A stretch of DNA of 64,000 bases from Mytilus trossulus (GCF_036588685.1 NC_086382.1:72974001-73038000), one strand, 5' to 3'. Positions 12,026 to 40,915 are shown, counted from the first letter of the stretch. Numbers and translations are program-made. Notes: generated by a model from the letters alone, not told the origin.

Positions 12026-13435
12026 TATCATACTGTAATATCTAACACAAAATCCAACACGAATCTAAGAGGAAAGTATGCGAAGCATAGCAATGATAAC
12101 ACGTGTCCAATTTCATATAATTCCACGACTGAGGATCTACCATAAATTCTAAAATATATCTGCCTTTAATTTGTTTGGAAAGAAAGATAATTTATTTGTA
12201 TTATTTTTGTTGTCTTTAGTGTTTGGAATATAATCCTTATAATTGAGTTCTGTCGCCTCTCAAGAAATTGTATAAATACAATTTACCTCTTTATGTTCCA
12301 TTCATAAAGTTACATAGTTTACCCCTCTCCCACCAGTTATAAAAATACTGGATTCGCATCTATTTATTTCAAAACTACATGTGTGCCAACATTGTAAGTC
12401 AAATGCAGAACTGACTTGCATAAGCCACCATCTCATGTAACGTTGCCAGTGATTGATATTAGTTCAAAGGGTCAACAACATTATTTTTATTTACAAATTA
12501 TATATACCAACTACTAGATTTTTTAGTTCAAATATATCTAATCGTAAAAACCATGGAATATATAGTACTTATCCTCACCATCATTAATAACATATATATT
12601 ATATTGTGACATGCTTTTGTATGCTTTTTACTTATAACCACATACGTATGTTTAAATAATTGAGTGTGCTTGTATGATTTTTACAAAAGTAAACATTCCT
12701 TGTCAAGTGTATCTAATCCTGTATCTAAGACATATTTTAGTTGCAAATATATATTGTGCTGCCAAAAATATAGTTTTCTGTGTGTTTTGGTTTACCTTTG
12801 TTTCTGTCATTTTTTCCCTTTGTTCCACTTTTTATCTAAAATACAAGTCCACTTTTTTCTAAATGCTTTGAAAACAATTGAAAAAGTAGAATAAAGAAAC
12901 GTGAATTTCAGAATTATTATTACTAACAAGTACTCACTAGTTTTATGATATTAAACACTACTTGTATGATTTGGTGTTTCTTTAATTACATCCCAGCCCT
13001 TTGTTCTGAGCCGTAACACCCCTACCAGATCACCCCAGTTTGAGTTTCTTTGTTATGCATGCTTTCCTTTGTTCTGTTACATTTTGACGGGAATGTCAAA
13101 TCCACTTCAAAACTTATAATTAATTATACGGAAAAGACTATCTATCAAAATTCACGAAAAAAAATCCAGTGTATATGCTGGATATAAGCCCTAAGCCGGG
13201 AATGTCACAGTATATACCCTGTCTGAGACCTGGCCCCGGCGCCATAAAACTATTTGAGTACAGTTTTTTTACTCAGCCTGAGAATTTTCTCAATTTTTTT
13301 ATTCTCAGCAAAATACCCCGCCATAAAAAAATTCTCAGGTTTTTTTTACTCAAAAGTTAAGAATATTCTTAAATATTTGAGAACAGCCAAAGCCATACTT
13401 AAGTCAAAAATTAAGACTTAAGTATTATATAAACA

Positions 13436-16400
13436 ATGGCCGCTGTCCATGTACGCCGCATGAGAGTTCGCAATCGCAGACAGAGAAACCTGCCTAGGCC
13501 GAGGGTTTTCAGAGACAGGCTCAATCCACTTGAGTTTATGGATGACAATGAGTTATTTGACAGATATAGGTTTCGTCGACCGACCATCACTTATATATTA
13601 AATGGAATTCACCATTTTCTCGAGCGTCAAACTAGGAGGAATTTTGCCCTATCTCCCGTTACTCAGTTATTGTTGTTTCTAAGATTTGTGGCAACAGGCA
13701 CTCACTTGAGTTTAGTGGGGGATAGTTTAAATGTATCTGAATCAGCAACTGGGAGGGCCTGCAGAGACGTTTGTCAGGCAATTATAACAGTATTTCAGCA
13801 TGTCATTTCTTTTCCCGTTGGTGAGAAGGCTATCCAAGTTATGGAAGGGTTTAGAAGAATTGCTGGTAAGAAGCTGCTATCTATTCAGTTTCCGCTTGCA
13901 TCTTATTCATCATTCCCATAGCAAGTTTCAGAGTAATCGGACTTTTTTAGTGTTTCATAAACACGTCTAAACCGGTTTACGCTCATAACCACTATGACTA
14001 GTTTTGGGGCTCTCTTTGAGGGCAATTTTAATATGTTCATACCAACTTAATTGTTGGTTATTTTTCATTAAAAGACATTATGCCAGTTTTTCGGACCTTC
14101 TTTGCCTTCCCGGCTTTTAATAGTTTGAACATGTAAATTGTAAACATTTGTTGTACGTACCTAATTATACAGATTTTCTTGACAGTAGGCTAACAACGAA
14201 AATGATGAAAATAGTGACCGTAAGATTACCAAATAAAATTGCATTATGTAGTTAAAAAGATACTATAATGCACAGATATTTGGATAATTTGACAATCTGT
14301 TAGGAACTCTAAAGGAGCGTCTGCAAAATCTTAATAAAAACGACTTCGGACTTGCATCATCCGGATCAACATGGTTGCTTCGTACCTCGAATAGCACCGT
14401 CCCTTTTTGTGGAATGTTTTATGAAGTAAAATCCAAATCCCTTTATAGAATTTTCCGCCCTCTAAAAAAAGAAAATAAAGGGGTCGACAGGAAACAATTC
14501 TCAAAAGTTTTCTCGGAGTTCATCCCACTTTACAGATAGTTATTTTTTCGTTAGATAGAGGGCTATTGAAACTACCTGTATTTTCCAAATATCCATTTAA
14601 ATACCGATAATTAAATATTCCACCAGGTGAATAAGAATTTTCACTAACATAATCTTAACTTTAATAAGCTATGTGAAAAATCTATCTAATAATTGAGGGG
14701 TTTAAATTACAAAAATCTCCATAGAAATGAGATGTACACGTGACTTATATGTCCTTATATTATAACATATTATTAACTTACCGTATGTGGCTTCTATTTA
14801 ACTACTCGTACTACATCATAACTTTCACAATGAAATGCCATTTATAGCCGACTATGCAGTATTGACTCTGCTTATTGAAGTACATAGCAGTTGTTAATTT
14901 CTGTGTCATTTGTTCTCTTAATCTTTTTATATACATTGTAGTCAGGAAGCTAATGTTCAATGATCATTGTTTGTTAATGTGGTTCATAATTGTTTCCCGT
15001 TTTTATAAAGATTAGACGTTGATTTTCCTTTTTGAATGGTCTAAAACTAATCATTTTTGGGGCCCTTTGTAACTTGTTGTTCGATTTGAGCCAAAACTCA
15101 TTGTTGAAGCCCATGCTTTTGACCTATAATGCTTTACTTTTCCACATGTGGATGTTGGACAGAGAGTTGTCTCATTTGCACTTATACCACATTTTTCTTT
15201 AACATTTATATAAGCAGATACTTTTTTAAGACGATGCCCCGGGAAAAACTATTTCTTTTTTTGTCTCATTATTTTACTCTTTGTGTAGGCAAGACAAAAA
15301 TGAAATAGGGCTAAATTATGACTAAATTCCAGACACCAAAAAACGCATTCTATGCAACAACGTTTGTAACGTTCATTGTGATTGGATAACGTCACTTTTT
15401 TACATGGCATCATTTGACAATTGATACTATTGGACGTATGCGCAAGCACATACGACAGATTTTAACGTTGTTTTCTGTCAGTTTCATAAGAATGGAGATA
15501 ACAATATTGTATTTTAAGCTCCGACAGAGTCAAATGTGTATTCTTTAATAGGGTATAGATACATATATTATTAATTTGTACATTTCAACAAATTTGATTC
15601 GTTTATGGAAAGTCAAATGTTAAACTATATTTTCGATGGTAGAGAGAAAACGGTGGATAGCAAAAAACACTTTGCACATCAAAAAGCACAAGGAGACAAT
15701 ATGATATCTATAAAATTCCAACATTGACGATTTTGATATAAATATGGTCTGAAATTATTAAGATCACAAATATAGCCTTTGTATGGGATATCGACCTGAA
15801 AAAGTATATTGACCTCAAACTTCGTCATCAATCAATATACTTCTTTAAGGTCAATATATCCTTTTATCATATGTTGAGTAGTAAATACACTAGTTTAGAA
15901 AATTTGATAAATAGCCTGCTGTTTAATCTATATCGTGCAACTTTGATGCGCACCCTTTATTACACCCCTACATTTTTCGGTGACCATGAATTTGACAGCT
16001 AGTGCCCCTTTAAAACAAGACAAAAGAGGAAATAAGGGAACCCAGTGAACAGTTCATATAATATAACTCTCCTATTGATATATATGATAAAGCATATAAA
16101 ACCTGGCAAAATCTGTATCACATGCCATATCACCCTTGACAAATATCATACCTGGGGCTTACAGGCCCTTGGGGTGATATTGGTGTCTCGGGATGATATG
16201 ACATATGATACAGATATGTTACCATGTATTATTTTCTATTTATCGCTATTTTGTGCATTTTTCCTTTAATTTTGTTTTGTGATAATTTTCATATCGTGCT
16301 TCTCGCTTGAGATGGAAAAATTATCGCTAGAAACTAAGGAGGCCATGTGGCTTTGCTAACGAAATTGAGATTGAAATTGACAACATCGTCATAGGTAAAA

Positions 16401-18660
16401 TAGCAATAAACAGATCGTCATTGGTCGTCTCAACTTGATTGCTTTTCTCACTTTCGCTCTACCAGCTCATGCGAGAAAAGCAATCTCGTTGAGATAATCA
16501 ACGATAATCTCTAAGTATTAATCTCATACAAAGGCTATATTTGCATAATATCCAAATCAATTTGCAATATATATTATTTAAGTTGTATTGCTTACCAACA
16601 AATAATTCTTAAAAGATTGGTGGAGAGGACTTCTTGTAGTTGAGATTGACTTTGGTTATTTTTAAATGGACAACATTGGCCGAACTTCTTTTCATAACAA
16701 ATGTTAACAGGATGGCGGTGAAAATAACACAGAAGTTAATAAAATTCAATTCACTGCATGTTATTTGTTAAATAAAATAACTAAAACAAAGAGATTCGTT
16801 TGAATGATAAAAAAAATTGTAGTTTAATTTTTACAAGATTGCAGAATCGACGAATACATATTTTTGCGTAAATATACAACATATGTGGAATAGAGGTTAT
16901 TAAAGTGTTAAGAAACATATTTTTCCTATTTCAAATCTTAAACAATTATAAGGATTAAACGTCTTTTTAAAGGAATTTATTGGTGTATAAACTGGATCAA
17001 CTCACTCACAAACATATAAAGTCCTTTGGACTTAATTTGTTTGTGAGTTGATTGATTGAGTTTATACACCAGTGACGTCCTATAAATAGGCTTTAAATCC
17101 TGTGATAAAATATTATTATTATAGTGAGCAACTTTTAATGATTCTTTCTTATATTTGAAGGATTTCCAAATGTACTAGGATGTGTAGATGGAACGTTTGT
17201 GAAAATTATCAGCCCACATGAAAATGAAGCCGACTTTGTTAACAGAAAAGGAGTCCACGCTTTAAATGTTCAAGTAAGATAAACAATTATAATACAGAAA
17301 ATAATCCTTCAAACAGTATAATAACTTTTTGTGCTGATATAATCATACTTTCATTCAATTACAATTTTGCATTGTACCCAAAAAATTGAATTGTCGGTTG
17401 TCAAATTTGGAATTAGTCTAAATGCAAAAACGTCAACTGTATTTTAAGGCAACAGTTATAACTATGCATTTATTTTTATATTTAAATAAGCGGATCTCCT
17501 GTGTGAAATTAAATACTACATTTTTAAAGGTAAACAATGTTAATTTCAATTCCGAAAAATTTGAATGTCATTCCAATCAGATTACATGATACATACTGTG
17601 TGACATTAAAAAATATGTTGCCTTAGTTTTAAACATACTGTTCTTTTTTTTTGAAGATGGTTTGTGATCCTAATTTTAGAGTCACTTCTTTATGTGCAAA
17701 ATGGCCAGGATCAGTGCACGACAGCAGAATATTCAGAACAAGTGGACTATGTCAACAATTTGAAAATGGTAACTTAATTTAATTTTGTTTTCTTATTAGT
17801 AGAACTGAAGAAAAACTTCTTAATCTTCAAAACTTCAATTTTACATACTAACATATAGGATGCTCCAGCATTTACACATATTTCAGGCTTATGATGAACT
17901 TGCATGTATATTAACCATATATCTTACAATATAATAATGAGTCATTTAAATAGCCCACACAAGCTAGTAAACATATATACATATCTGGTCATTTGGTGTT
18001 GATATGCTTATTACAATTTCTTTTATAGTTTTGGCGAAAGAATGCAAATGATTTATTGTGCATATACTCAAATGCATCAATAGTGGGGAGATAATTGTGA
18101 AGTTTCTTCCCTTCGCGGAAAGTATTTTATTTGATTTTTTAATACAAATAAATTGGAAGGTGTAGTTTCTATAACTGTTTATGATACAAGCTTTAACTGT
18201 TTTAAACTGAATGTTGATTTATTTGATTATTTGAAATACAATGTGAATATTACATTAAAAAATTATTTAAACAGGAATTCACCAAGGACTGTTACTAGGT
18301 GACTCTGGGTATCCATGTACCAAATACTTGATGACCCCCTACCTTAGTCCAGCTGATAACTGCCAGGGAAATTTTAACAGAGCTCTTTGCAGGACACGGG
18401 TTCTAATTGAACAAACATTTGGGATACTAAAAAGGAGGTTCAATTGTTTACATGATGGTTTAAGAACAACACCAGAACAGTCTATTAAATATGTTACATC
18501 ATGTGTTATTTTACACGATATTGGCATTGACCATAATGACATAATTATAAATAATAATATTGAGGAAATTGCTGTTGCAGATTGTACAGGTTGTATTAAT
18601 ATGAACCCAACCTTTGATGGCACTGCAAAAAGGAATGACATAGCAAGACAATTTTTTTAA
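13436..18660 (+). CDS. Harbinger (HARBI1-like) DDE transposase, left copy. Exons 13436-13865, 17161-17273, 17657-17768, 18275-18660 (346 aa).
   Basis: GT-AG introns with compatible phases give a spliced length of 1041 nt. Motifs: [70 protein letters not shown]. The D-D-E triad is intact. Confidence 0.93.
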
Positions 18661-19821
18661 GTAAACCTTGCATTTGTAAATATCTTACTAGATTTCCGAA
18701 TTCACATTTTCTTCATTATTAAATTATAAATTTTGATTACACTGGAATATTATAACATAGAACTTTCCCAATTCATGTCCGACAGGTAAAATACATTTTT
18801 GGTATTTGAATTTATTATTTAGAATATGTTAAATAAATAAGGGATCTCTTACACAAAGATTTCATAAGCGATATGCAACATATCTTTAGTCACCAATGAT
18901 CTGAAACTTGAATTAAATATGCTGTCAGAAATATACAGTTGCTTACATTTATATGATATGAATATATGTCAAGGTGACAAAATGGGTACAATGTAAGACA
19001 ATATTTTACCAAGTATAATACATGTGTTTGAATGAAGAACAGAAATACTTTAAAAGTTAAGTTATTTAAAATTGAATACCAAAATTTTCAGATTTACAGT
19101 AATAAACAGTCAGGGGCATTACTTAAACAAGTAACAATAAAAATTACCTATACAAGTAATGTTGAAAACGAGGCTAATTTAAATATAACTTATTTAAGTT
19201 ATTTTTCTGAATATTATTTTTATAGGTGTCCAAGAATACATATTTTACTAGCTTTAAATAATTTTCACAGTTATTTGGTTATTTTTCCCTTGATATATAG
19301 AAACTAATTCTTCAGAAACACTTATTAAATTTCTGACGCACTTATCTTTCATACCCACGCTTCTGGGTCAAAGATTGGTCTCTTGGGACTATTAAATTAT
19401 CATTTTCTCTAAAATTTTGAAGGTAGACTGATATAAATAGATAGATACTTGTGAATTAATTAAGACCTGAACTTATTTATAATTTGTAACCTTAATCAAT
19501 TACATATGTGCCTTAGATAAGTGTAATTGCTTTTTTTTCCAAAAATGTTTAAAATAACTTATTCAAGTAATATTTTTGTCATTATTTTCAAAGTAACCCT
19601 TTATCTCTATACTCCTCTCAAATCTGATAAAAAAAATATTTTATGATATAAAATGTTGTTTCAAATTATGAAAACTACATTTGGTCTGTTTCTATTGAAA
19701 ATTAAAATAACTCTTTTAAGTAATTTTGTTATTTTTAAAATAAAAAAATACTTATATATATAAGTAGTTAAAAAAACCCAACTTGTTTAAGTAACGCCCC
19801 TGACTGATAAACATGTTGTGA

Positions 19822-22800
19822 TTATGGTTCATTTAAAATTTGTACACAATCAGGAAACTCAGACTGAAGTTTACAGATTAAACTTTGTTTTTTCAGGATA
19901 AAAACTTCTTTTGCCAATTTCAAATTTTCTTGTTCCATCTTTATTTTCTTGGTTTCTTCACGCAACCTTTCATTGTCCAACATTAAGTTTTCCTCTTCCA
20001 ACTCTGCCAAACTCCTTCGTCCCCTTTTGATGTTTCCTATGGACATGAATTATAAAACATGTAAAGTTGTTATAAAGTTATACAAATGTACATTCTTTTT
20101 GAATTTCATGATGAATCTGCTTTGTGAGCTGTGTCATAAAATAAGTTAATATCAAACCTTCTTATAATAAAATAGCTGAATCCATTTAAAGACATCAAGA
20201 AAATTAATTTGTATTTATTAAGTTATGTCCTATATGCAAATTACAATTGTGCAACAAGGTGGTTAAATTTTCAAAGATTTAGTTCCCCTTTGCTTGTTGA
20301 CATAATTATTCATTTTAATATCTTAGAAACATGTTCATTTTCATATATCTGTTTTATTTGTTAACAGTGTTTAGAATGAATTTTTAATTATAATTCTACA
20401 TAAATAAATATGATTTGTTTTTTGTACCAGAATTAAGCCATAAGTTTTCTTTTTTTTTAATTGTTATACATCTGTCATTTCAGGGACATTGATAGAAGGC
20501 AATGCTGTATAGACTGCTCATTGTTGAAGGCTAAACAAAAGTCTTTAGTTGTTAATGTCTTTTGGTCTATTGAGGAGAGTTGTGTCATTGCCAATTATAC
20601 CACATCTTCTTTTTTAAAGAAACATTTATCCTACTTTTAAAATGATTTTATTTAATTTCCTAGGTAGCAACATGAACAAATATGTCTATGTTGATCTCTT
20701 GTCTGGTTCAAAGTGATAATGATGTTGCAATTTCAATTGTGACGGCAATCATGTGATTCACATGTTTTAATCGAATTTATTATTAGAACATGGTTGGGTT
20801 TCCAAAGCCATAGAATAAACTCATATCAGAATCCATAACTTTTGAAAGACAAATTAGCCCTATGTTAGGAAACTTACCTTTACCTTTACCCTTTGGATTA
20901 GAACTTGGTACACTTGTCCTTTCACATTAGAAAATGCCTGTACCAAGTCAGGAATATGACAGTTGTTACCCATTCGTTTGATGTGTTTGGACTTTTGATT
21001 TTGCCTTTTGATTTTTGATTTTCCTTTTTGAATTTTCCTCGGAGTTCGGTATTTTTGTGTTTTTACTTTTTATTTTTTATACCATTTTGTTCTATAAAAA
21101 TCAATTTTCATGTAAACATTCATAGATTTTTATTACATTTTACATGGACGAAGACTTCAATTTTCAAACATCAACCCCATCGATACATTGTAAAGAGGTA
21201 TACTATTTCACAAATATATAGGAAATGCCCAGGCTTTATTCAATGAGCTGGACATGATCTCTGGGAAGTTTGCTACTGTAGACGTTTATTATCTCAAAAA
21301 GGTTATATATATATGTTTTATTTCAAATATGTATTTAATAACAGTTTTGATGTTATCAACTTAACCATTTTCTTTTCAGCAATTATCAAAAATCACTTTT
21401 TTCATATGTTTGTCATATATAACTTGATAGTTTCAATTGCAAACTAAAAAAAACTGTTGTTCTAAAATAATCAAATATACAATAAGCTGGGTTAATTTCA
21501 TGTTATGTCCATGCCATATCTGGGGCCTGAATTTTGAAGTATTTTTTTTCCATTTGTAAAGGTCACCTGTGTGTAATTGCTCAATCAAACTTTTTATCAC
21601 TTGTCAATTTTTCCAATGGGATCCATTACAGGAAAGACAAAAATGAAATACTTTATGTAACATATATGTTATAAATGTTGAAGACCATATTTTTAATAGA
21701 TTTTGTCATACTCAAGACTTTGAATTATATACATGTATTAACAACTTTACCTTGTTCTTCCACTAAGTTTACTTCAATACATGTAGGCTCTTTGTCAGCT
21801 TCAATCTGTCCATCAAGCTCCTCATTTTGTGTTGATTCTGAAATGTAATTGCATTATGTTGTATAAGTTTATTAATAATTTACTATAACTTCAGAAATGT
21901 AATAAAATTGACACTGCCTTGACAATATTTTTGTTGTTATTTTTAAAAACATTAACTATGGGTTTTTTTACACTAAAACTTAGTCTGACATGAGCAGTGG
22001 TGAGGGAGACAAATTACAATATTGAGAAAATTGAGAAAGGAAATGGAAAATATATCAAATGGTCAACAACTGGACCCAATAGAAGTTGACCTCCTTGACC
22101 TTTCACACCATCACATTGATTGTATACTAATATATATTTTAAATAACCGGAAATTAGTTTCTTTTTCTGTTGCCAAATTATTCATTTCATGTAAATTGGT
22201 TGGAGCAACAAACCTTTATATGTGTTTTCTTTTATAAATATCACCAAATCATTGATCAACGAAGGTAAATCAGGTGTTTTTAAATTTCTCAGGCAACTGT
22301 ATGTGTGACATAGGTAATTCACCAATAAATCACTTTGTGATTCATCTTGCTCCACCTCACTCTGAGAAATTCCCTTTAAGGTATCCATAATGTGAATATC
22401 ATTGGCTCTTGGGACTGGTGTTACAACTGTATGAGTGTCTAAAAATTTTTCTATTTTTACTGCCATTTTCTTGGCTGTTGTCACCAAATTTCTTTCTGAA
22501 AAATGAGACAATGGTTGAAATGACTTTATGCATGTCATATTTCTATGCATATTCATTTCTGACCTATATAGGAAGTTGTAGTGCAAGACATACATGTCAG
22601 GTTGGTGCTTATTTATTGTATATCTAAACTTAATTGTCATTATGGGACTTCAGGCAGTGACCATTTAATGAAAGTTTAGCTTTTTTCTTAAGTAATTTTC
22701 TGATTTATAAGCAGGAAAGACAGACATCTATAAGTAACAATATCTGTTCCTCAGATAATATCAGTTAGATTGGAGATGATGAAAATCTTACCCCTGAGCA

Positions 22801-24984: not shown

Positions 24985-25009
24985 CTGCATTAGAATTAAA
25001 AAGCCAAAT

Positions 25010-25170
25010 GGCGCCATAAAACTTTTTTTTGCTGAGTAAAAAAATATTCTCAGAATGAATTATTTTACTCAGCTAAGAATGAGAACTTTTTTATCCGCCA
25101 TAAAAAAATATTCTCAACGTTGAGAATATTCTCAGCTGAGAATATTTTTTCTCAGCTGAGAATTTTTTTC
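25010..25170 (+). repeat. Internal, truncated Harbinger terminus (Myb-side end) with palindromic subterminal motifs
   Basis: GGCGCCATAAAACT matches the outer TIR minus its first 5 nt. It is followed by repeated TTCTCAG/CTGAGAA motifs and a second CCGCCATAAAAAAA, as at 13233-13350. Confidence 0.85.
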
Positions 25171-28300: not shown

Positions 28301-31300
28301 TTCTCATTCCATACTATATTCAAAATGTACATTTTAACTGCAACATTTTTATGCCCCATGTACACATGTTCCTCATGATATGTTTGTTTTTAAAAGTTTT
28401 AATGCCAAATAAGAGATATGACCCCAATTTCACAGTCCACTGAACATAGAAAATGATAGTGCAAGTGGGGCATCAGTGTAATGGGGAAACATTAATGCTT
28501 CCTTTAGATGTGAAATCGTTGATACATTTCTATAATGTATGTTTAATATTATCACGATTTCTCACAATGTGATTGGCTGATATTGTCCTAATAATTTTCG
28601 GTACAAATTGTATCCCCTTTAATCCCTTTTACCATTGACATAATAACAGAAATTGAGTTGTTTTATAGTCCAATATATTTAACTTGCTTAATTTGAAAAA
28701 CATATATGCTTTTTAGGTAGAGAAAAATATGACCTACAAAAGAGACCAAAAACAGGAGGAGGTCCTGCTGCCAAAACCACTCAGGCAGAGGAACTCCTCA
28801 TCAGTCATATGATTGAAGAGAAGCGTACACAGCTGACTGGTTTTCCAGACGGTGTAGACACTGACAGTTAGTATTACATGTATATATATTGTTGTCTCAT
28901 TGGCACTCACACCACATCTTCCTACATCAAGATATTAATCACTCTATTCTCTCTGACAATATATTGTGACATGCATGTGAAACGTGGAATTACCACCAGA
29001 ATTACATGTAGATTTTATTTATTAAAGTCTGTAAATAATAAAGTATAGAAGAAGTCTAAAACTGAATACAATTATATGCAGCTTTTGATAAATTTGGTGT
29101 TGCATCAATAATGCATTAAAGTTATCATAGGATGGTTTTTACAATATAGTTAATAATGTTTTTCTATTGTTGTTACTGCATAATAAACACATGTAACCTG
29201 ATCTGTAATTAACCTATATTAAACAAGTCATCTGTCTTTTTTTTTCTTCTACATTTTGATTTGAATTAATTTAAAGGTTTTTTGTTTTATTTGTGGGACT
29301 GTTGGTCAGTTAGTTACATGTGGTATTTTGTCCGAAATGAGAACTGATAGTATATGCCTTATTTCAGCAATTGCATCACAACCTGAATGTTCTGGATCTT
29401 GGATTTCAAGACAGAAGGAGGCTCTTGATGCCTACAAAGAACTATCAGGTATTTTTATTTTTTACAATCTCTTGTTTCTTTATACATTTATTACAGTTTG
29501 CTGTTTTCATGCTTCTTGTGTAAGAAATAAACACATATGAAAGAAAGAGGCTTGAAAATTGATCATGCTCAGGGGTAAGATTTTCATCATCTCCAATCTA
29601 ACTGATATTATCTGAGGAACAGATATTGTTACTTATAGATGTCTGTCTTTCCTGCTTATAAATCAGAAAATTACTTAAGAAAAAAGCTAAACTTTCATTA
29701 AATGGTCACTGCCTGAAGTCCCATAATGACAATTAAGTTTAGATATACAATAAATAAGCACCAACCTGACATGTATGTCTTGCACTACAACTTCCTATAT
29801 AGGTCAGAAATGAATATGCATAGAAATATGACATGCATAAAGTCATTTCAACCATTGTCTCATTTTTCAGAAAGAAATTTGGTGACAACAGCCAAGAAAA
29901 TGGCAGTAAAAATAGAAAAATTTTTAGACACTCATACAGTTGTAACACCAGTCCCAAGAGCCAATGATATTCACATTATGGATACCTTAAAGGGAATTTC
30001 TCAGAGTGAGGTGGAGCAAGATGAATCACAAAGTGATTTATTGGTGAATTACCTATGTCACACATACAGTTGCCTGAGAAATTTAAAAACACCTGATTTA
30101 CCTTCGTTGATCAATGATTTGGTGATATTTATAAAAGAAAACACATATAAAGGTTTGTTGCTCCAACCAATTTACATGAAATGAATAATTTGGCAACAGA
30201 AAAAGAAACTAATTTCCGGTTATTTAAAATATATATTAGTATACAATCAATGTGATGGTGTGAAAGGTCAAGGAGGTCAACTTCTATTGGGTCCAGTTGT
30301 TGACCATTTGATATATTTTCCATTTCCTTTCTCAATTTTCTCAATATTGTAATTTGTCTCCCTCACCACTGCTCATGTCAGACTAAGTTTTAGTGTAAAA
30401 AAACCCATAGTTAATGTTTTTAAAAATAACAACAAAAATATTGTCAAGGCAGTGTCAATTTTATTACATTTCTGAAGTTATAGTAAATTATTAAAAAACT
30501 TATACAACATAATGCAATTACATTTCAGAATCAACACAAAATGAGGAGCTTGATGGACAGATTGAAGCTGACAAAGAGCCTACATGTATTGAAGTAAACT
30601 TAGTGGAAGAACAAGGTAAAGTTGTTAATACATGTATATAATTCAAAGTCTTGAGTATGACAAAATCTATTAAAAATATGGTCTTCAACATTTATAACAT
30701 ATATGTTACATAAAGTATTTCATTTTTGTCTTTCCTGTAATGGATCCCATTGGAAAAATTGACAAGTGATAAAAAGTTTGATTGAGCAATTACACACAGG
30801 TGACCTTTACAAATGGAAAAAAAATACTTCAAAATTCAGGCCCCAGATATGGCATGGACATAACATGAAATTAACCCAGCTTATTGTATATTTGATTATT
30901 TTAGAACAACAGTTTTTTTTAGTTTGCAATTGAAACTATCAAGTTATATATGACAAACATATGAAAAAAGTGATTTTTGATAATTGCTGAAAAGAAAATG
31001 GTTAAGTTGATAACATCAAAACTGTTATTAAATACATATTTGAAATAAAACATATATATATAACCTTTTTGAGATAATAAACGTCTACAGTAGCAAACTT
31101 CCCAGAGATCATGTCCAGCTCATTGAATAAAGCCTGGGCATTTCCTATATATTTGTGAAATAGTATACCTCTTTACAATGTATCGATGGGGTTGATGTTT
31201 GAAAATTGAAGTCTTCGTCCATGTAAAATGTAATAAAAATCTATGAATGTTTACATGAAAATTGATTTTTATAGAACAAAATGGTATAAAAAATAAAAAG

Positions 31301-32544
31301 TAAAAACACAAAAATACCGAACTCCGAGGAAAATTCAAAAAGGAAAATCAAAAATCAAAAGGCAAAATCAAAAGTCCAAACACATCAAATGAATGGGTAA
31401 CAACTGTCATATTCCTGACTTGGTACAGGCATTTTCTAATGTGAAAGGACAAGTGTACCAAGTTCTAATCCAAAGGGTAAAGGTAAAGGTAAGTTTCCTA
31501 ACATAGGGCTAATTTGTCTTTCAAAAGTTATGGATTCTGATATGAGTTTATTCTATGGCTTTGGAAACCCAACCATGTTCTAATAATAAATTCGATTAAA
31601 ACATGTGAATCACATGATTGCCGTCACAATTGAAATTGCAACATCATTATCACTTTGAACCAGACAAGAGATCAACATAGACATATTTGTTCATGTTGCT
31701 ACCTAGGAAATTAAATAAAATCATTTTAAAAGTAGGATAAATGTTTCTTTAAAAAAGAAGATGTGGTATAATTGGCAATGACACAACTCTCCTCAATAGA
31801 CCAAAAGACATTAACAACTAAAGACTTTTGTTTAGCCTTCAACAATGAGCAGTCTATACAGCATTGCCTTCTATCAATGTCCCTGAAATGACAGATGTAT
31901 AACAATTAAAAAAAAAGAAAACTTATGGCTTAATTCTGGTACAAAAAACAAATCATATTTATTTATGTAGAATTATAATTAAAAATTCATTCTAAACACT
32001 GTTAACAAATAAAACAGATATATGAAAATGAACATGTTTCTAAGATATTAAAATGAATAATTATGTCAACAAGCAAAGGGGAACTAAATCTTTGAAAATT
32101 TAACCACCTTGTTGCACAATTGTAATTTGCATATAGGACATAACTTAATAAATACAAATTAATTTTCTTGATGTCTTTAAATGGATTCAGCTATTTTATT
32201 ATAAGAAGGTTTGATATTAACTTATTTTATGACACAGCTCACAAAGCAGATTCATCATGAAATTCAAAAAGAATGTACATTTGTATAACTTTATAACAAC
32301 TTTACATGTTTTATAATTCATGTCCATAGGAAACATCAAAAGGGGACGAAGGAGTTTGGCAGAGTTGGAAGAGGAAAACTTAATGTTGGACAATGAAAGG
32401 TTGCGTGAAGAAACCAAGAAAATAAAGATGGAACAAGAAAATTTGAAATTGGCAAAAGAAGTTTTTATCCTGAAAAAACAAAGTTTAATCTGTAAACTTC
32501 AGTCTGAGTTTCCTGATTGTGTACAAATTTTAAATGAACCATAA
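25306..32544 (+). CDS. Harbinger Myb/SANT-like DNA-binding partner protein. Exons 25306-25481, 27552-27619, 28717-28866, 29368-29448, ~29871-30152, 30529-30615, 32330-32544 (middle exons less certain).
   Basis: The spliced N-terminus MAEKNKRGANWTTDEELALID...ALFGK...RQNGWKEICDILNA-RFTVRKRTAEEVKKKYYNLKQR-SREKYDLQKRPKTGGGP is a trihelix/SANT domain followed by the TGGG motif typical of this family. The C-terminus is coiled-coil-like (LAELEEENLMLDNERLREETKKIKMEQENLK). Splice phases are consistent. Confidence 0.8.
25709..27082. mobile_element. Possible old non-autonomous hAT-like element in Myb intron 1
   Basis: Imperfect inverted ends CAGTGGCGTAGCTTGCC / GGTAAGCTACGCCCATG; no recognisable TSD. 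Confidence 0.4.
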
Positions 32545-33705
32545 TCACAACATGTTTATCAGTCAGGGGCGTTACTTAAACAAGTTGGGTTTTTTTAACT
32601 ACTTATATATATAAGTATTTTTTTATTTTAAAAATAACAAAATTACTTAAAAGAGTTATTTTAATTTTCAATAGAAACAGACCAAATGTAGTTTTCATAA
32701 TTTGAAACAACATTTTATATCATAAAATATTTTTTTTATCAGATTTGAGAGGAGTATAGAGATAAAGGGTTACTTTGAAAATAATGACAAAAATATTACT
32801 TGAATAAGTTATTTTAAACATTTTTGGAAAAAAAAGCAATTACACTTATCTAAGGCACATATGTAATTGATTTAGGTTACAAATTATAAATAAGTTCAGG
32901 TCTTAATTAATTCACAAGTATCTATCTATTTATATCAGTCTACCTTCAAAATTTTAGAGAAAATGATAATTTAATAGTCCCAAGAGACCAATCTTTGACC
33001 CAGAAGCGTGGGTATGAAAGATAAGTGCGTCAGAAATTTAATAAGTGTTTCTGAAGAATTAGTTTCTATATATCAAGGGAAAAATAACCAAATAACTGTG
33101 AAAATTATTTAAAGCTAGTAAAATATGTATTCTTGGACACCTATAAAAATAATATTCAGAAAAATAACTTAAATAAGTTATATTTAAATTAGCCTCGTTT
33201 TCAACATTACTTGTATAGGTAATTTTTATTGTTACTTGTTTAAGTAATGCCCCTGACTGTTTATTACTGTAAATCTGAAAATTTTGGTATTCAATTTTAA
33301 ATAACTTAACTTTTAAAGTATTTCTGTTCTTCATTCAAACACATGTATTATACTTGGTAAAATATTGTCTTACATTGTACCCATTTTGTCACCTTGACAT
33401 ATATTCATATCATATAAATGTAAGCAACTGTATATTTCTGACAGCATATTTAATTCAAGTTTCAGATCATTGGTGACTAAAGATATGTTGCATATCGCTT
33501 ATGAAATCTTTGTGTAAGAGATCCCTTATTTATTTAACATATTCTAAATAATAAATTCAAATACCAAAAATGTATTTTACCTGTCGGACATGAATTGGGA
33601 AAGTTCTATGTTATAATATTCCAGTGTAATCAAAATTTATAATTTAATAATGAAGAAAATGTGAATTCGGAAATCTAGTAAGATATTTACAAATGCAAGG
33701 TTTAC

Positions 33706-36700
33706 TTAAAAAAATTGTCTTGCTATGTCATTCCTTTTTGCAGTGCCATCAAAGGTTGGGTTCATATTAATACAACCTGTACAATCTGCAACAGCAATTT
33801 CCTCAATATTATTATTTATAATTATGTCATTATGGTCAATGCCAATATCGTGTAAAATAACACATGATGTAACATATTTAATAGACTGTTCTGGTGTTGT
33901 TCTTAAACCATCATGTAAACAATTGAACCTCCTTTTTAGTATCCCAAATGTTTGTTCAATTAGAACCCGTGTCCTGCAAAGAGCTCTGTTAAAATTTCCC
34001 TGGCAGTTATCAGCTGGACTAAGGTAGGGGGTCATCAAGTATTTGGTACATGGATACCCAGAGTCACCTAGTAACAGTCCTTGGTGAATTCCTGTTTAAA
34101 TAATTTTTTAATGTAATATTCACATTGTATTTCAAATAATCAAATAAATCAACATTCAGTTTAAAACAGTTAAAGCTTGTATCATAAACAGTTATAGAAA
34201 CTACACCTTCCAATTTATTTGTATTAAAAAATCAAATAAAATACTTTCCGCGAAGGGAAGAAACTTCACAATTATCTCCCCACTATTGATGCATTTGAGT
34301 ATATGCACAATAAATCATTTGCATTCTTTCGCCAAAACTATAAAAGAAATTGTAATAAGCATATCAACACCAAATGACCAGATATGTATATATGTTTACT
34401 AGCTTGTGTGGGCTATTTAAATGACTCATTATTATATTGTAAGATATATGGTTAATATACATGCAAGTTCATCATAAGCCTGAAATATGTGTAAATGCTG
34501 GAGCATCCTATATGTTAGTATGTAAAATTGAAGTTTTGAAGATTAAGAAGTTTTTCTTCAGTTCTACTAATAAGAAAACAAAATTAAATTAAGTTACCAT
34601 TTTCAAATTGTTGACATAGTCCACTTGTTCTGAATATTCTGCTGTCGTGCACTGATCCTGGCCATTTTGCACATAAAGAAGTGACTCTAAAATTAGGATC
34701 ACAAACCATCTTCAAAAAAAAAGAACAGTATGTTTAAAACTAAGGCAACATATTTTTTAATGTCACACAGTATGTATCATGTAATCTGATTGGAATGACA
34801 TTCAAATTTTTCGGAATTGAAATTAACATTGTTTACCTTTAAAAATGTAGTATTTAATTTCACACAGGAGATCCGCTTATTTAAATATAAAAATAAATGC
34901 ATAGTTATAACTGTTGCCTTAAAATACAGTTGACGTTTTTGCATTTAGACTAATTCCAAATTTGACAACCGACAATTCAATTTTTTGGGTACAATGCCAA
35001 ATTGTAATTGAATGAAAGTATGATTATATCAGCACAAAAAGTTATTATACTGTTTGAAGGATTATTTTCTGTATTATAATTGTTTATCTTACTTGAACAT
35101 TTAAAGCGTGGACTCCTTTTCTGTTAACAAAGTCGGCTTCATTTTCATGTGGGCTGATAATTTTCACAAACGTTCCATCTACACATCCTAGTACATTTGG
35201 AAATCCTTCAAATATAAGAAAGAATCATTAAAAGTTGCTCACTATAATAATAATATTTTATCACAGGATTTAAAGCCTATTTATAGGACGTCACTGGTGT
35301 ATAAACTCAATCAATCAACTCACAAACAAATTAAGTCCAAAGGACTTTATATGTTTGTGAGTGAGTTGATCCAGTTTATACACCAATAAATTCCTTTAAA
35401 AAGACGTTTAATCCTTATAATTGTTTAAGATTTGAAATAGGAAAAATATGTTTCTTAACACTTTAATAACCTCTATTCCACATATGTTGTATATTTACGC
35501 AAAAATATGTATTCGTCGATTCTGCAATCTTGTAAAAATTAAACTACAATTTTTTTTATCATTCAAACGAATCTCTTTGTTTTAGTTATTTTATTTAACA
35601 AATAACATGCAGTGAATTGAATTTTATTAACTTCTGTGTTATTTTCACCGCCATCCTGTTAACATTTGTTATGAAAAGAAGTTCGGCCAATGTTGTCCAT
35701 TTAAAAATAACCAAAGTCAATCTCAACTACAAGAAGTCCTCTCCACCAATCTTTTAAGAATTATTTGTTGGTAAGCAATACAACTTAAATAATATATATT
35801 GCAAATTGATTTGGATATTATGCAAATATAGCCTTTGTATGAGATTAATACTTAGAGATTATCGTTGATTATCTCAACGAGATTGCTTTTCTCGCATGAG
35901 CTGGTACAGCGAAAGTGAGAAAAGCAATCAAGTTGAGACGACCAATGACGATCTGTTTATTGCTATTTTACCTATGACGATGTTGTCAATTTCAATCTCA
36001 ATTTCGTTAGCAAAGCCACATGGCCTCCTTAGTTTCTAGCGATAATTTTTCCATCTCAAGCGAGAAGCACGATATGAAAATTATCACAAAACAAAATTAA
36101 AGGAAAAATGCACAAAATAGCGATAAATAGAAAATAATACATGGTAACATATCTGTATCATATGTCATATCATCCCGAGACACCAATATCACCCCAAGGG
36201 CCTGTAAGCCCCAGGTATGATATTTGTCAAGGGTGATATGGCATGTGATACAGATTTTGCCAGGTTTTATATGCTTTATCATATATATCAATAGGAGAGT
36301 TATATTATATGAACTGTTCACTGGGTTCCCTTATTTCCTCTTTTGTCTTGTTTTAAAGGGGCACTAGCTGTCAAATTCATGGTCACCGAAAAATGTAGGG
36401 GTGTAATAAAGGGTGCGCATCAAAGTTGCACGATATAGATTAAACAGCAGGCTATTTATCAAATTTTCTAAACTAGTGTATTTACTACTCAACATATGAT
36501 AAAAGGATAAATTGACCTTAAAGAAGTATATTGATTGATGACGAAGTTTGAGGTCAATATACTTTTTCAGGTCGATATCCCATACAAAGGCTATATTTGT
36601 GATCTTAATAATTTCAGACCATATTTATATCAAAATCGTCAATGTTGGAATTTTATAGATATCATATTGTCTCCTTGTGCTTTTTGATGTGCAAAGTGTT

Positions 36701-38944
36701 TTTTGCTATCCACCGTTTTCTCTCTACCATCGAAAATATAGTTTAACATTTGACTTTCCATAAACGAATCAAATTTGTTGAAATGTACAAATTAATAATA
36801 TATGTATCTATACCCTATTAAAGAATACACATTTGACTCTGTCGGAGCTTAAAATACAATATTGTTATCTCCATTCTTATGAAACTGACAGAAAACAACG
36901 TTAAAATATGTAAATTAAAATCTGTCGTATGTGCTTGCGCATACGTCCAATAGTATCAATTGTCAAATGATGCCATGTAAAAAAGTGACGTTATCCAATC
37001 ACAATGAACGTTACAAACGTTGTTGCATAGAATGCGTTTTTTGGTGTCTGGAATTTAGTCATAATTTAGCCCTATTTCATTTTTGTCTTGCCTACACAAA
37101 GAGTAAAATAATGAGACAAAAAAAGAAATAGTTTTTCCCGGGGCATCGTCTTAAAAAAGTATCTGCTTATATAAATGTTAAAGAAAAATGTGGTATAAGT
37201 GCAAATGAGACAACTCTCTGTCCAACATCCACATGTGGAAAAGTAAAGCATTATAGGTCAAAAGCATGGGCTTCAACAATGAGTTTTGGCTCAAATCGAA
37301 CAACAAGTTACAAAGGGCCCCAAAAATGATTAGTTTTAGACCATTCAAAAAGGAAAATCAACGTCTAATCTTTATAAAAACGGGAAACAATTATGAACCA
37401 CATTAACAAACAATGATCATTGAACATTAGCTTCCTGACTACAATGTATATAAAAAGATTAAGAGAACAAATGACACAGAAATTAACAACTGCTATGTAC
37501 TTCAATAAGCAGAGTCAATACTGCATAGTCGGCTATAAATGGCATTTCATTGTGAAAGTTATAATGTAGTACGAGTAGTTAAATAGAAGCCACATACGGT
37601 AAGTTAATAATATGTTATAATATAAGGACATATAAGTCACGTGTACATCTCATTTCTATGGAGATTTTTGTAATTTAAACCCCTCAATTATTAGATAGAT
37701 TTTTCACATAGCTTATTAAAGTTAAGATTATGTTAGTGAAAATTCTTATTCACCTGGTGGAATATTTAATTATCGGTATTTAAATGGATATTTGGAAAAT
37801 ACAGGTAGTTTCAATAGCCCTCTATCTAACGAAAAAATAACTATCTGTAAAGTGGGATGAACTCCGAGAAAACTTTTGAGAATTGTTTCCTGTCGACCCC
37901 TTTATTTTCTTTTTTTAGAGGGCGGAAAATTCTATAAAGGGATTTGGATTTTACTTCATAAAACATTCCACAAAAAGGGACGGTGCTATTCGAGGTACGA
38001 AGCAACCATGTTGATCCGGATGATGCAAGTCCGAAGTCGTTTTTATTAAGATTTTGCAGACGCTCCTTTAGAGTTCCTAACAGATTGTCAAATTATCCAA
38101 ATATCTGTGCATTATAGTATCTTTTTAACTACATAATGCAATTTTATTTGGTAATCTTACGGTCACTATTTTCATCATTTTCGTTGTTAGCCTACTGTCA
38201 AGAAAATCTGTATAATTAGGTACGTACAACAAATGTTTACAATTTACATGTTCAAACTATTAAAAGCCGGGAAGGCAAAGAAGGTCCGAAAAACTGGCAT
38301 AATGTCTTTTAATGAAAAAGAACCAACAATTAAGTTGGTATGAACATATTAAAATTGCCCTCAAAGAGAGCCCCAAAACTAGTCATAGTGGTTATGAGCG
38401 TAAACCGGTTTAGACGTGTTTATGAAACACTAAAAAAGTCCGATTACTCTGAAACTTGCTATGGGAATGATGAATAAGATGCAAGCGGAAACTGAATAGA
38501 TAGCAGCTTCTTACCAGCAATTCTTCTAAACCCTTCCATAACTTGGATAGCCTTCTCACCAACGGGAAAAGAAATGACATGCTGAAATACTGTTATAATT
38601 GCCTGACAAACGTCTCTGCAGGCCCTCCCAGTTGCTGATTCAGATACATTTAAACTATCCCCCACTAAACTCAAGTGAGTGCCTGTTGCCACAAATCTTA
38701 GAAACAACAATAACTGAGTAACGGGAGATAGGGCAAAATTCCTCCTAGTTTGACGCTCGAGAAAATGGTGAATTCCATTTAATATATAAGTGATGGTCGG
38801 TCGACGAAACCTATATCTGTCAAATAACTCATTGTCATCCATAAACTCAAGTGGATTGAGCCTGTCTCTGAAAACCCTCGGCCTAGGCAGGTTTCTCTGT
38901 CTGCGATTGCGAACTCTCATGCGGCGTACATGGACAGCGGCCAT
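33706..38944 (-). CDS. Harbinger (HARBI1-like) DDE transposase, right copy. Exons 38944-38515, 35205-35093, 34709-34598, 34091-33706.
   Basis: Reverse-complement of the left copy; ORF-track peptides are identical. Confidence 0.93.
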
Positions 38945-40915
38945 TGTTTATATAATACTTAAGTCTTAATTTTTGACTTAAGTATGGCTTTGGCTGTTCT
39001 CAAATATTTAAGAATATTCTTAACTTTTGAGTAAAAAAAACCTGAGAATTTTTTTATGGCGGGGTATTTTGCTGAGAATAAAAAAATTGAGAAAATTCTC
39101 AGGCTGAGTAAAAAAACTGTACTCAAATAGTTTTATGGCGCCGGGGCCTGAATAACATATAATATGTCTCTGCCGCCGAGTTTTTTTCTGGCTTTGTCGC
39201 GCCAAAAACATCTTGACGTTTCTTATCTGTGACGTTGCAAAACTTGTGCCTCTCTATAGAACTGCACTTTCCCGCCGTCCATAATTTTTCCCGCGTCAAT
39301 GTAGCCGTAATTATGAAAAGGCGATGTATAAGTAATTTTACGGAAGTTATTGCTCTAAGATTGTCATAAACGATGTTTTTAATACAACATTATTTAAAAA
39401 TACAACTTTTAACCTTGAATATATATTTTTTTTATCTTTCTCGTCTTAAAATAAAGTGAAAATAATATACCAATTGCTATAATAGCTTTGAAGGTGACTT
39501 TCTTTTATCTTTGTCAAGTGAAACCCATGAAGCATTCTTAACCACCTTTAAAATACTAAAATATTTATATTATTCTCGGTTTTTTTTATTAGGTTATTGG
39601 TAAATGCTGTAAAAAAAATCTCTCAGATCATTGTATAAACGGCAAAACAACGGCACCCAATAAAAATGAAAATAAAAACAAAACGTGTACAAATTAATAA
39701 AAATAAATAAAATCTCCGAGCAGCTTCTCTATGATTCTATAACATACTTCTTGGTTTAAAGTATCAAACGTTTCAGATTAAAATTTTCATGATTTCAATA
39801 CTTGTTTCGGTAGGCGAGGAAATATTTTTTTTATATAAAAATTATTATTCTGTTGACCACTTATTTTAGAGAATACGAATGAAAAAAAAACATAGTAAAA
39901 ACGAGGGTAGAAATTCTCTAAAATGAATTTTTATTGTCTACAAGTGATCATGAATCAATAATAATTCATTTTCATTTACGATGATAAAGTACACACTGTA
40001 ATAAATTGACATACACAAAATATCTTTAAAATCTGTTAATTGATTAAATGTTCTCTTCTCAACGTTCAGTGGCAAATATTGCATGCAAATGATGCAATAT
40101 TGATCAATGTAAAGGACGTCTGAAATTCAATATACAATAAATCTATTGCTCAGTGGGTCCTACAAAGTAAAAAGATCTGTGGTGAATGTCAGAAAAAATA
40201 GGTTGCCACCTGGAAAGAATATCTATGATAGGAATAGAAATTAGTGTGTCTACTTCTAATTTAACATCCCCATTTCGAATGGAAATAAACATTTGTGTCA
40301 GTGCTTCCATGATGAAAAAGGTTTAAAACGTATTCAAATATCGTATGGCAATACAAGTACATCGGTTAAAATGTGTGTACTTTTACCAAAAAAAAGCAGA
40401 GACTTCAATTGTGGTATTTGAGCCCTAAATAAATGATTCAGTTCTTTTAAATAAAGCGTGTATGGTGTATTGTGAATAAATATTAATAATTTGCGTAATC
40501 AAGTATAACAGTTACCTTTTTTACGATTATTTATCAGGGATAAGACATTTGATTTATAGAGATATTTAGATTTATAGATGTACGAAAAAAAACCATAAAC
40601 AAATTTCTCGAAAGAATGCAACATTTAACATAAAAATGACGAACTAGATAATTAGTAACACGTTAAATAAGTTGGTATTATAGTACTAACAAGCTTATTA
40701 TCCTGTATCATTTATTGACCTACGTTTTGAGTATACTTTTAAAGCATTTTATTCAGTTTGCTACATTCCCGCCAAAATCGCCCTTTTGACGCCGTCTTTG
40801 ACGTTGTCAGTGCCCCTGAGTATTGTGACGTTACAATGGACCTTTGACGTTCTACACAATCAACAAGATTTGTGTGTAGAAGCCATAAATGTCCCTTTGG
40901 CAGCAAGAGGGTTAA

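What the first reader, a model, noticed from the sequence alone, without database searches (positions are those of the whole stretch)
13233..39147. 26-kb palindromic 'double Harbinger' bounded by two identical transposase-side ends and a single CTG TSD
Seen in the sequence: a nearly complete 14.1-kb element (25010-39147, Myb gene and transposase convergent) is fused to an inverted 11.8-kb copy (13233-25010) that is truncated in Myb intron 1. Both outer ends are the same (transposase-proximal) end, and the whole unit is flanked by CTG. Established: normal Harbingers have one left and one right end and 3-bp TSDs (TWA or CWG). Inference: the dimer either transposed as one unit using two like ends or was built in place by aberrant transposition or repair. 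It has two intact transposase genes and one intact Myb gene, so it may be an autonomous giant palindromic transposon.
Basis: partly seen in the sequence, partly recalled or inferred. Interest (0 to 1): 0.9.

Follow-up and report, generated by a model that had tools for sequence, protein, structure and literature searches.

The report
Head-to-head double Harbinger transposon in mussel
Two copies of one large cut-and-paste transposon lie head-to-head in a single target site of a mussel (Mytilus) chromosome; this is a real by-product of faulty transposition or repair, of a kind known from maize, and nothing shows that it moves as a giant transposon.

Summary
Window 13233-25010 is an inverted copy of 27526-39147. 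The arms differ by 9 substitutions, a 14-bp indel and a 156-bp foldback insert found only in the left arm. Both outer ends are the transposase-side (R) terminus. An uninterrupted paralogue of the target (41132-41206) carries one CTG, so the whole 25.9-kb block sits in one target site with a true CTG duplication. The inner junction (25010/25011) lacks the first 5-6 nt of the L terminal repeat, shares 1 nt of overlap and is not at a CWG target. It is therefore an end-joining scar, not a transposase joint.

Both transposase genes are identical and open (346 codons, 4 exons). The Myb/SANT-like gene is complete only in the right unit.

The junction is unique in this 1.3-Gb genome, and no public run held all its sampled words. 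Nothing shows that the dimer moves as a unit.

I favour a second copy landing on the resident copy's own target duplication, which this family does elsewhere, followed by loss of the palindrome's centre. The rival is one aberrant transposition using two R ends. The closest analogues are maize Mu killer and Ac composite insertions.

Other notes of this scan, on other pieces of this genome, flag self-stacked Harbingers and a Mu-killer-like hairpin.

The parts
13230..13232 (.). Left copy of the CTG target-site duplication
   Evidence: the uninterrupted paralogue at 41132-41206 has a single CTG between the same flanks.
13233..25010 (-). Left arm: inverted copy of the element, running from the R terminus to position x in Myb intron 1 (x = 27526 in the right unit). 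It lacks the L end, the Myb promoter and exon 1.
   Evidence: 99.9% identical to the reverse complement of 27526-39147.
13233..13250 (+). Outer R terminal inverted repeat (18 nt) of the left arm, followed by about 150 nt of subterminal TTCTCA/TGAGAA motifs
13436..18660 (+). Left-arm transposase gene. Exons 13436-13865, 17161-17273, 17657-17768 and 18275-18660 (the last includes the stop). Exon sequences are identical to those of the right-arm gene.
   Evidence: exon identity, 346 codons, no internal stop; DDE_Tnp_4.
19822..23557 (-). Left-arm promoterless remnant of the Myb-like gene (exons downstream of exon 1), identical to the right-arm exons
24603..24758 (.). 156-bp foldback mini-element inserted in the left arm only, flanked by a direct repeat of about 10 bp. 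It marks the arms as physically distinct DNA.
   Evidence: each half is 100% identical to the 76-83-bp terminal repeats of 3.3-3.5-kb elements elsewhere. No other Harbinger copy carries it.
25010..25011 (.). Inner junction: intron-1 position x joined to nucleotide 6/7 of the L terminal repeat. The junction has a 1-nt (G) overlap, the TIR tip GCCCC(G) is missing, and there is no CWG.
   Evidence: unique in the genome.
25011..39147 (+). Right unit: a full-length element lacking only the first 5-6 nt of its L terminal repeat
25306..25482 (+). Myb/SANT-like gene, exon 1 (present only once in the dimer)
   Evidence: PF13873, E 0.003, profile positions 1-50 of 78; all best Atlas clusters are Myb/SANT-like.
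28809..32544 (+). Myb-like gene, downstream exons, mapped with annotated Mytilus proteins: 28809-28868, 29367-29447, 29861-30151, 30516-30620, 31443-31493, 32329-32541 plus stop
33706..38944 (-). Right-arm transposase gene: exons 38944-38515, 35205-35093, 34709-34598 and 34091-33709, plus the stop. Splice sites are canonical GT/AG.
39130..39147 (-). Outer R terminal inverted repeat of the right unit
39148..39150 (.). Right copy of the CTG target-site duplication
41132..41206 (-). Paralogous empty site: 52 nt of the left flank, one CTG and 22 nt of the right flank, uninterrupted

Best explanation
This is a real head-to-head composite of two copies of one Mytilus PIF/Harbinger element, sitting in a single YCWGR target. 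Shown: the 25.9-kb block is bounded by two precise R termini and one true CTG duplication. Its inner junction is an end-joining scar that removed the L tip of the right unit and 2.5 kb of the left copy. Both transposase genes are intact. Inferred route: a full-length copy was resident here (flank-CTG-L...R-CTG-flank). A second copy, most simply the sister-chromatid copy, then inserted in inverted orientation into the CTG beside the resident L end by an ordinary transposition. That gave a near-perfect 28-kb palindrome (R'...L'-CTG-L...R). Such palindromes break at their centre. Asymmetric resection and end joining removed the central CTG, 5-6 nt of one L tip and 2.5 kb of the other copy, which stabilised the structure. 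Consequences: neither unit keeps a usable L terminus, so each is immobilised on its own, and only the R-R pair remains as a possible substrate. The locus is a fixed source of transposase and Myb-like protein. Its 11.6-kb inverted arms could also give hairpin RNA.
For: One target site with a true target duplication. The junction lacks the TIR tip, has a 1-nt overlap and is not at a CWG. The family self-targets. Three different non-autonomous derivatives (85-95% alike; 2.3, 2.7 and 3.8 kb) are stacked on one CTG at C6:34878696-34887577. Two further ends sit in the family's own TTCTCAGR subterminal motifs (L028 and L037). In all, about 4 of 50 sampled ends touch another copy. The target consensus is YCWGR, and a TSD followed by the TIR's first G fits it. 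Perfect palindromic transgene junctions are unstable and are stabilised by asymmetric central deletions (PMC8701086, reviewing Akgun 1997 and Cunningham 2003). This route needs only canonical transposase reactions. The arms are distinct DNA: each carries at least one private derived substitution, and the left arm carries a private 156-bp insertion.
Against: The central CTG and both L tips, which would prove stacking, are the very parts that are deleted. Both stacking junctions seen in this family are head-to-tail and involve short derivatives, not 14-kb autonomous copies. No allele with a monomer at this site was seen. A 2.5-kb one-sided loss is larger than the typical centre-break deletion. 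Reads of the source individual were not available, so the assembly is not independently verified.
Confidence: 0.4

Rival explanations
1. One aberrant transposition event built and integrated the composite. The transposase used two R termini, either from sister chromatids or from a fold-back or hairpin derivative of one excised copy whose cut L end was joined to an internal break at x. It inserted them together into one CTG target. This would be the Harbinger counterpart of maize Ac 'composite insertions', which are made by alternative transposition with re-replication and end joining.
For: The two precise R ends, the single target duplication and the preferred YCWGR site are what a concerted integration of two R ends predicts. 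The inner break lies 5-6 nt from a transposase cleavage site. A 3' end at the trimmed L tip that folds back on x with 1 nt of pairing and copies out to R gives exactly the observed order (my derivation). The L and R ends share the 18-nt TIR, a second CCGCCATAAAAAAA box about 87 nt in, and dense TTCTCA/TGAGAA motifs, so like ends may be interchangeable. Ac composite insertions are flanked by target duplications and hold inverted fragments of one terminus (bioRxiv 10.1101/2020.01.07.897926; PMC4270019). The other near-identical autonomous copy on this chromosome also lies in a young rearrangement: its L end plus at least 1.5 kb of flank occurs three times, twice direct and once inverted, at 99.7-99.9%.
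Against: Like-end synapsis has not been shown for PIF/Harbinger. The route needs more breaks or an unusual intermediate. No donor-flank DNA lies inside the insertion, as it often does in Ac composite insertions. There is no second locus with the junction.
Confidence: 0.3
2. Assembly artefact: a fold-back chimeric read, a haplotype fusion or a mis-resolved repeat created the palindrome or its inner junction.
For: No public run held more than 7 of the 11 sampled words across the junction. No reads of the source individual could be laid. Mussel assemblies are prone to false duplications, and another locus of this family shows 99.7-99.9% duplicated flanks.
Against: A fold-back read gives a symmetric palindrome, whereas this one has a 2.5-kb non-palindromic centre and a break 5-6 nt from a TIR tip. 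The flank-CTG-R' and R-CTG-flank junctions are both precise and fit one empty site; an assembler cannot invent that, and two haplotypes of a monomer cannot give it. The arms differ by 9 non-homopolymer substitutions, an indel and a 156-bp transposon insertion. The window has no gaps, and the flanks share no inverted homology.
Confidence: 0.1
3. The dimer is a currently active, autonomous 26-kb palindromic transposon that moves as a unit on its two R ends.
For: It has two intact R termini, identical over their first 827 nt, two open transposase genes and one complete Myb-like gene. It carries two of only four near-identical transposase copies in the genome.
Against: There is a single locus. The junction is unique in the genome and was not seen whole in 22 runs from 11 studies. 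The arms have had time to gain 9 substitutions and a transposon insertion without a second copy appearing. Excision and reinsertion of PIF/Pong/Harbinger elements fall with size (PMC10288884).
Confidence: 0.07

Closest known systems
Mu killer (Muk) of maize
   Same: It is a partial inverted duplication of an autonomous DNA transposon that includes the transposase gene and is bounded by two copies of the same terminal repeat (PMC3440606).
   Different: Muk belongs to the Mutator superfamily and is found in a plant. It is about 4 kb and defective, and it is known to give hairpin RNA and heritable silencing. The element here is a PIF/Harbinger in a bivalve with 11.6-kb arms, and it keeps a complete gene set. 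Its transcription and small RNAs are untested.
Ac/Ds composite insertions and Ac killer 1 (alternative transposition with re-replication)
   Same: These are flanked by a target duplication, hold inverted fragments carrying the same transposon terminus, and are fused internally by end joining (bioRxiv 10.1101/2020.01.07.897926; PMC4270019; PMC13635294).
   Different: They belong to the hAT superfamily, have 8-bp duplications, arise from two closely linked elements and often include donor-flank DNA. Here there is no flank DNA inside and no linked partner, and one arm is nearly full length.
Palindromic transgene junctions stabilised by centre-break deletion
   Same: A long head-to-head repeat loses its centre of symmetry by an asymmetric deletion with little or no microhomology (PMC8701086).
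   Different: Those are injected concatemers in mouse. Here the palindrome would have been made by two natural transposon insertions.
Canonical PIF/Harbinger autonomous elements (for example Harbinger3_DR and Ping/Pong; from my own knowledge plus PMC2836001)
   Same: They have a DDE_Tnp_4 transposase plus a separate Myb/SANT-like DNA-binding protein, short terminal repeats, a 3-bp target duplication and derived Tourist-like short elements.
   Different: Canonical elements have one L and one R end. This unit has two R ends, and its only L end is internal and trimmed.
Foldback and Galileo-type elements with kilobase-long inverted termini
   Same: Kilobase-scale inverted arms end in identical termini (PMC3688188).
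   Different: Those are multi-copy families whose long arms belong to the mobile unit. This one is a single locus with a repair scar.

Membership tests
PIF/Harbinger superfamily element | DDE transposase of the DDE_Tnp_4 / Plant_tran type | tested here: met
   PF13359 on exons 2-4 (E 1.4e-16 on exon 4); four exons cover residues 18-336 of a 338-aa relative, giving 346 open codons.
PIF/Harbinger superfamily element | Second gene for a Myb/SANT-like DNA-binding protein | tested here: met
   PF13873, E 0.003, 17.8 bits. This is below the 21.7-bit cut-off because exon 1 covers only profile positions 1-50 of 78; all ten best named Atlas clusters are Myb/SANT-like. Downstream exons match annotated Mytilus proteins. 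The joined protein was not searched.
PIF/Harbinger superfamily element | 3-bp target-site duplication (TWA or CWG) and short terminal inverted repeats | tested here: met
   39 of 50 ends are flanked by CAG or CTG, with a pyrimidine at position -4. The 18-nt terminal repeat is shared by the L and R ends.
Composite insertion made by alternative transposition (Ac/Ds type) | Bounded by transposon termini with one target duplication at one site | tested here: met
Composite insertion made by alternative transposition (Ac/Ds type) | Internal fusion of truncated copies by end joining, not by strand transfer | tested here: met
   the TIR tip is missing, there is a 1-nt overlap, and no CWG lies at x.
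Composite insertion made by alternative transposition (Ac/Ds type) | Termini drawn from two separate or sister elements, with re-replicated donor flank or a linked donor rearrangement | tested here: not met
   No DNA foreign to the element lies between the arms, apart from the later 156-bp insert. The origin of the two termini cannot be tested with these tools.
Mu killer-type silencer locus | Partial inverted duplication of an autonomous element with two copies of one terminus | tested here: met
Mu killer-type silencer locus | Hairpin transcript, derived small RNAs and silencing of the family | not tested
No RNA was examined.
Mobile composite (macro)transposon | The same unit at two or more loci with different flanks and target duplications | tested here: not met
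   the 200-nt junction occurs once in the 1.3-Gb genome; the best share was 0.64 of the sampled words in any run.
Fold-back assembly artefact | Symmetric palindrome with identical arms and no biological boundary features | tested here: not met
   asymmetric centre, arm-private variants, precise termini in one target site, and no inverted homology of the flanks.

The most novel reading that the evidence does not exclude
The dimer is a natural 'transposon killer' in an animal. Read-through from the left-arm transposase gene or from the central Myb promoter would give a long hairpin RNA (arms up to 11.6 kb, loop 2.5 kb) that feeds siRNA or piRNA production and silences this Harbinger family in carriers. 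That would be a self-inflicted route to silencing like Mu killer and Ac killer in maize. Alternatively, or in addition, the dimer can still move as a 26-kb unit on its two like ends.
Probability: 0.15. Interest if true: 0.7.

Novelty: new member of a known kind. Interest (0 to 1): 0.4.

Why it matters
If real, this is a cleanly resolved animal example of how a cut-and-paste transposon damages itself. One locus records a target-site duplication, two like ends, a repair scar and later divergence of the arms. It also locks two of the genome's four near-identical transposase genes into a unit that can no longer excise in the normal way. It gives a testable case for two questions. Can PIF/Harbinger transposases use two like ends? 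Do inverted self-duplications start small-RNA silencing of DNA transposons in animals, as they do in maize? In practical terms, it is a likely site of instability and a trap for assembly and PCR in mussel genomes.

Tried and rejected
1. Two separate insertions with loss of the DNA between them. Rejected: the paralogous empty site shows that the two flanks are contiguous around one CTG.

2. Self-insertion by transposase strand transfer of the L end into intron 1. Rejected: the joint lacks the first 5-6 nt of the TIR, and x is not a CWG.

3. Gap repair in place, with the left flank invading the R end in reverse. Rejected by reasoning: after excision the flank keeps no TIR homology, and CTG does not pair with the R-side CTG in that orientation.

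4. Fold-back read or haplotype fusion. See the rival explanations; judged unlikely.

5. Search for other abutting TIR pairs. Only the C6 array was found.

6. The C3:86.30-Mb cluster first looked like R'...L...R, but it is an old mosaic of short derivatives at 72-96% identity.

Only 3 of the 9 arm differences could therefore be polarised.

8. Pfam scans of further plus-strand ORFs gave nothing.

9. The single run search and the single read-laying run returned only Logan contigs of other individuals. They can show neither the source animal's molecules nor the orthologous empty allele. The empty-site reads come from a multi-copy host repeat.

10. Spliced gene models were checked exon by exon only. 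The joined proteins were not sent to any search or folding tool. In one script the transposase exons were concatenated only to count codons and stops.
Full report
**Observation**

The inverted repeat is real. Window 13233-25010 is the reverse complement of 27526-39147. Across 11.6 kb the arms differ by 9 substitutions, one 14-bp indel and a 156-bp insert at 24603-24758 that only the left arm has. The centre, 25011-27525, is not repeated.

Both outer ends start with the same 18-nt terminal repeat followed by the same R-specific sequence. CTG lies at 13230-13232 and at 39148-39150. The window has no gaps. The flanks beyond the element share no inverted homology.

**What the element is**

The right unit carries a DDE_Tnp_4 transposase on the minus strand in four exons: 38944-38515, 35205-35093, 34709-34598 and 34091-33709. 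The splice sites are canonical. The exons cover residues 18-336 of a 338-aa relative and give 346 open codons.

On the plus strand a Myb/SANT-like gene starts at 25306. Exon 1 hits PF13873 at E 0.003 over profile positions 1-50 of 78, and every best Atlas cluster is Myb/SANT-like. Its downstream exons (28809-32541) match proteins annotated in Mytilus trossulus and M. californianus at 89-91%. So the genome is a Mytilus or a close relative. This fits the 'mollusc' and 'marine plankton' labels of the runs that hold the sequence.

I checked the gene models exon by exon. The joined proteins were not sent to any search or fold.

All nine arm differences lie outside the exons. The two transposase genes are therefore identical, and the left arm holds a promoterless Myb remnant without exon 1.

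**The family in this genome**

Dozens of 2-4-kb non-autonomous derivatives share about 185 nt of the L end and 190 nt of the R end. Only four near-identical transposase copies exist. Two are in this dimer, one is at C10:24.35 Mb and one is at C8:9.23 Mb.

Fifty ends give the full terminal repeat GCCCCGGCGCCATAAAAC. The flanking triplets are CAG (21) or CTG (18), and the base before them is a pyrimidine in 44 of 50, so the target is YCWGR. Because CWG is so strongly preferred, a matching CTG on both sides would arise by chance in roughly four cases in ten.

**The target site**

The TSD question is settled another way. The 52 nt left of the block and the 22 nt right of it recur, uninterrupted and with a single CTG, 2 kb downstream in inverted orientation (41132-41206; 96% identity). 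In contigs of three other runs, the left flank likewise continues after CTG directly into the first 15 nt of the right flank. These are paralogues within a multi-copy host repeat, not the orthologous allele. They still show that the whole 25.9-kb block interrupts one site and duplicated its CTG. That excludes two insertions at different sites followed by a deletion of the DNA between them.

**The inner junction**

Genomic L ends begin GCCCCG-GCGCC. At 25011 the element begins GCGCC, preceded by intron-1 sequence that ends in G. So 5-6 nt of the tip are missing, the overlap is 1 nt, and the intron partner (27526) is not at a CWG. A transposase strand transfer would keep the tip and would choose a CWG. 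This junction is an end-joining or fold-back-priming scar.

**Is the structure real?**

No reads of the sequenced animal were available. The run search on 140 nt across the junction found 22 holders in 11 studies, but none held more than 7 of the 11 sampled words. That is what is expected if the roughly three junction-spanning words are absent everywhere, so the junction is private, rare or artefactual.

Several points argue against an artefact:
- The palindrome is asymmetric, and its break lies 5-6 nt from a TIR tip.
- Both flank junctions are precise and fit one empty site. Neither a chimeric read nor two haplotypes of a monomer can produce that.
- The arms carry private variants. A at 14060 is found only in the left arm; the right arm, another genomic copy and all contigs of three runs have C. 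T at 37563 is found only in the right arm.
- The left arm has a private insertion of a 156-bp foldback whose halves are 100% identical to the terminal repeats of 3.3-3.5-kb elements elsewhere.

I put the chance of an artefact at about 0.1.

**How it arose**

Two routes fit every observed feature.

Route S uses only canonical reactions. A resident copy lay at this site, and a second copy inserted in inverted orientation into the CTG beside its L end. The resulting near-perfect 28-kb palindrome then lost its centre. The family does stack in this way. At C6:34878696-34887577, three different derivatives (85-95% alike; 2.3, 2.7 and 3.8 kb) lie head to tail and share CTG. Two more ends sit in the family's own TTCTCAGR subterminal motifs. 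A TSD followed by the TIR's first G also fits YCWGR. Perfect palindromic junctions are known to be unstable and to be stabilised by asymmetric central deletions (PMC8701086). Note s1-827173 reports stacking in another Harbinger family of this genome; I did not check that locus.

Route A is a single aberrant event in which two R termini were integrated together. They came either from sister chromatids or from a fold-back derivative of one excised copy. Meanwhile the cut L end, trimmed by 5-6 nt, was joined to an internal break. This mirrors maize Ac composite insertions, which are flanked by target duplications and hold inverted fragments of one terminus (bioRxiv 10.1101/2020.01.07.897926; PMC4270019). 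The L and R ends share the TIR, a second CCGCCATAAAAAAA box about 87 nt in, and dense TTCTCA/TGAGAA motifs, so like ends might serve. The other autonomous copy on this chromosome also sits in a young rearrangement: its L end plus at least 1.5 kb of flank occurs three times at 99.7-99.9%.

I favour S (0.4) over A (0.3), because S needs no untested like-end synapsis. The parts that would decide between them are the deleted ones.

**Consequences**

The left arm has no L end, and the right unit's L end lacks its cleavage tip. Neither can excise alone, so only the R-R pair is left. The junction is unique in the genome. PIF/Pong/Harbinger mobility falls with size (PMC10288884). The arms have had time to gain 9 substitutions (0.08%) and a transposon insertion without a second copy of the unit appearing. 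'Autonomous giant transposon' is therefore unsupported.

[quoted passage not shown] Hairpin RNA and silencing are thus a reasonable hypothesis, but untested here.

**Verdict**

The structure is a biologically made composite of a known kind in a new superfamily and host. There is no evidence that it moves as a unit. Interest is moderate.

Noticed in passing
window 24603-24758; relatives at e.g. G000:C8:24326776-24330110, C8:24349787-24353120, C7:4953505-4956927 and C9:77129194-77132727: The 156-bp insert in the left arm is a foldback made of two terminal repeats. They are 100% identical to the 76-83-bp inverted termini of 3.3-3.5-kb elements at several loci. The insert is flanked by a direct repeat of about 10 bp (TTAACCAGGG). 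This points to a very recently active DNA transposon family and its miniature derivative.
   Followed up: partly
G000:C6:34878696-34887577 (loci L014, L016, L019, L046, L047, L052): Three different non-autonomous derivatives of this Harbinger family (2.7, 3.8 and 2.3 kb; 85-95% alike) lie head to tail with only a CTG between neighbouring termini. This is self-stacking on the target duplication. They are the only two abutting TIR pairs in the genome.
   Followed up: yes
G000:C10:24341679-24385800 (loci L002, L003, L008-L010, L013, L034): The other near-identical autonomous copy on this chromosome lies in a young rearrangement. Its L end plus at least 1.5 kb of the same flank occurs three times (twice direct, once inverted) at 99.7-99.9% identity, but only one transposase exon 4 is present. 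This is either an alternative-transposition product or a false duplication in the assembly.
   Followed up: partly
window 13180-13232 + 39151-39172, and 41132-41206 (minus strand): The dimer interrupts a 75-nt unit that recurs inverted 2 kb downstream and is multi-copy in other Mytilus runs. It is probably one terminal repeat of a host element of about 2 kb, whose body includes a 570-bp repeat (39171-39745) with at least 40 copies at 82-99% identity.
   Followed up: partly
window 12984-13182: A SINE-like repeat of about 180 bp lies immediately left of the target. It has more than 1000 candidate copies in the genome at 85-94% identity.
   Followed up: no
window 25898-27502: This 1.6-kb stretch of Myb intron 1 is replaced by about 0.49 kb in the C10:24.3-Mb copies. 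The dimer's break point x (27526) lies 24 nt beyond its right border. This may be a coincidence or a fragile spot.
   Followed up: no
window 13361-14739 in run X12 (coded organism B) versus X1, X2 (A) and X11 (C): Contigs covering the transposase exon-1 region are about 99% identical in runs of two coded organisms. They are absent at 95% likeness or better from a deep run of a third, which still holds the termini. The autonomous copy therefore seems patchily distributed among related mussels.
   Followed up: no
window 1-287 and 3581-3867: Direct repeats of 287 nt (96% identity), 3.58 kb apart, bracket the region that another note of this scan calls a Penelope-like retroelement. A 512-nt inverted match lies between 2699-3210 and 45729-46240.
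   Followed up: no
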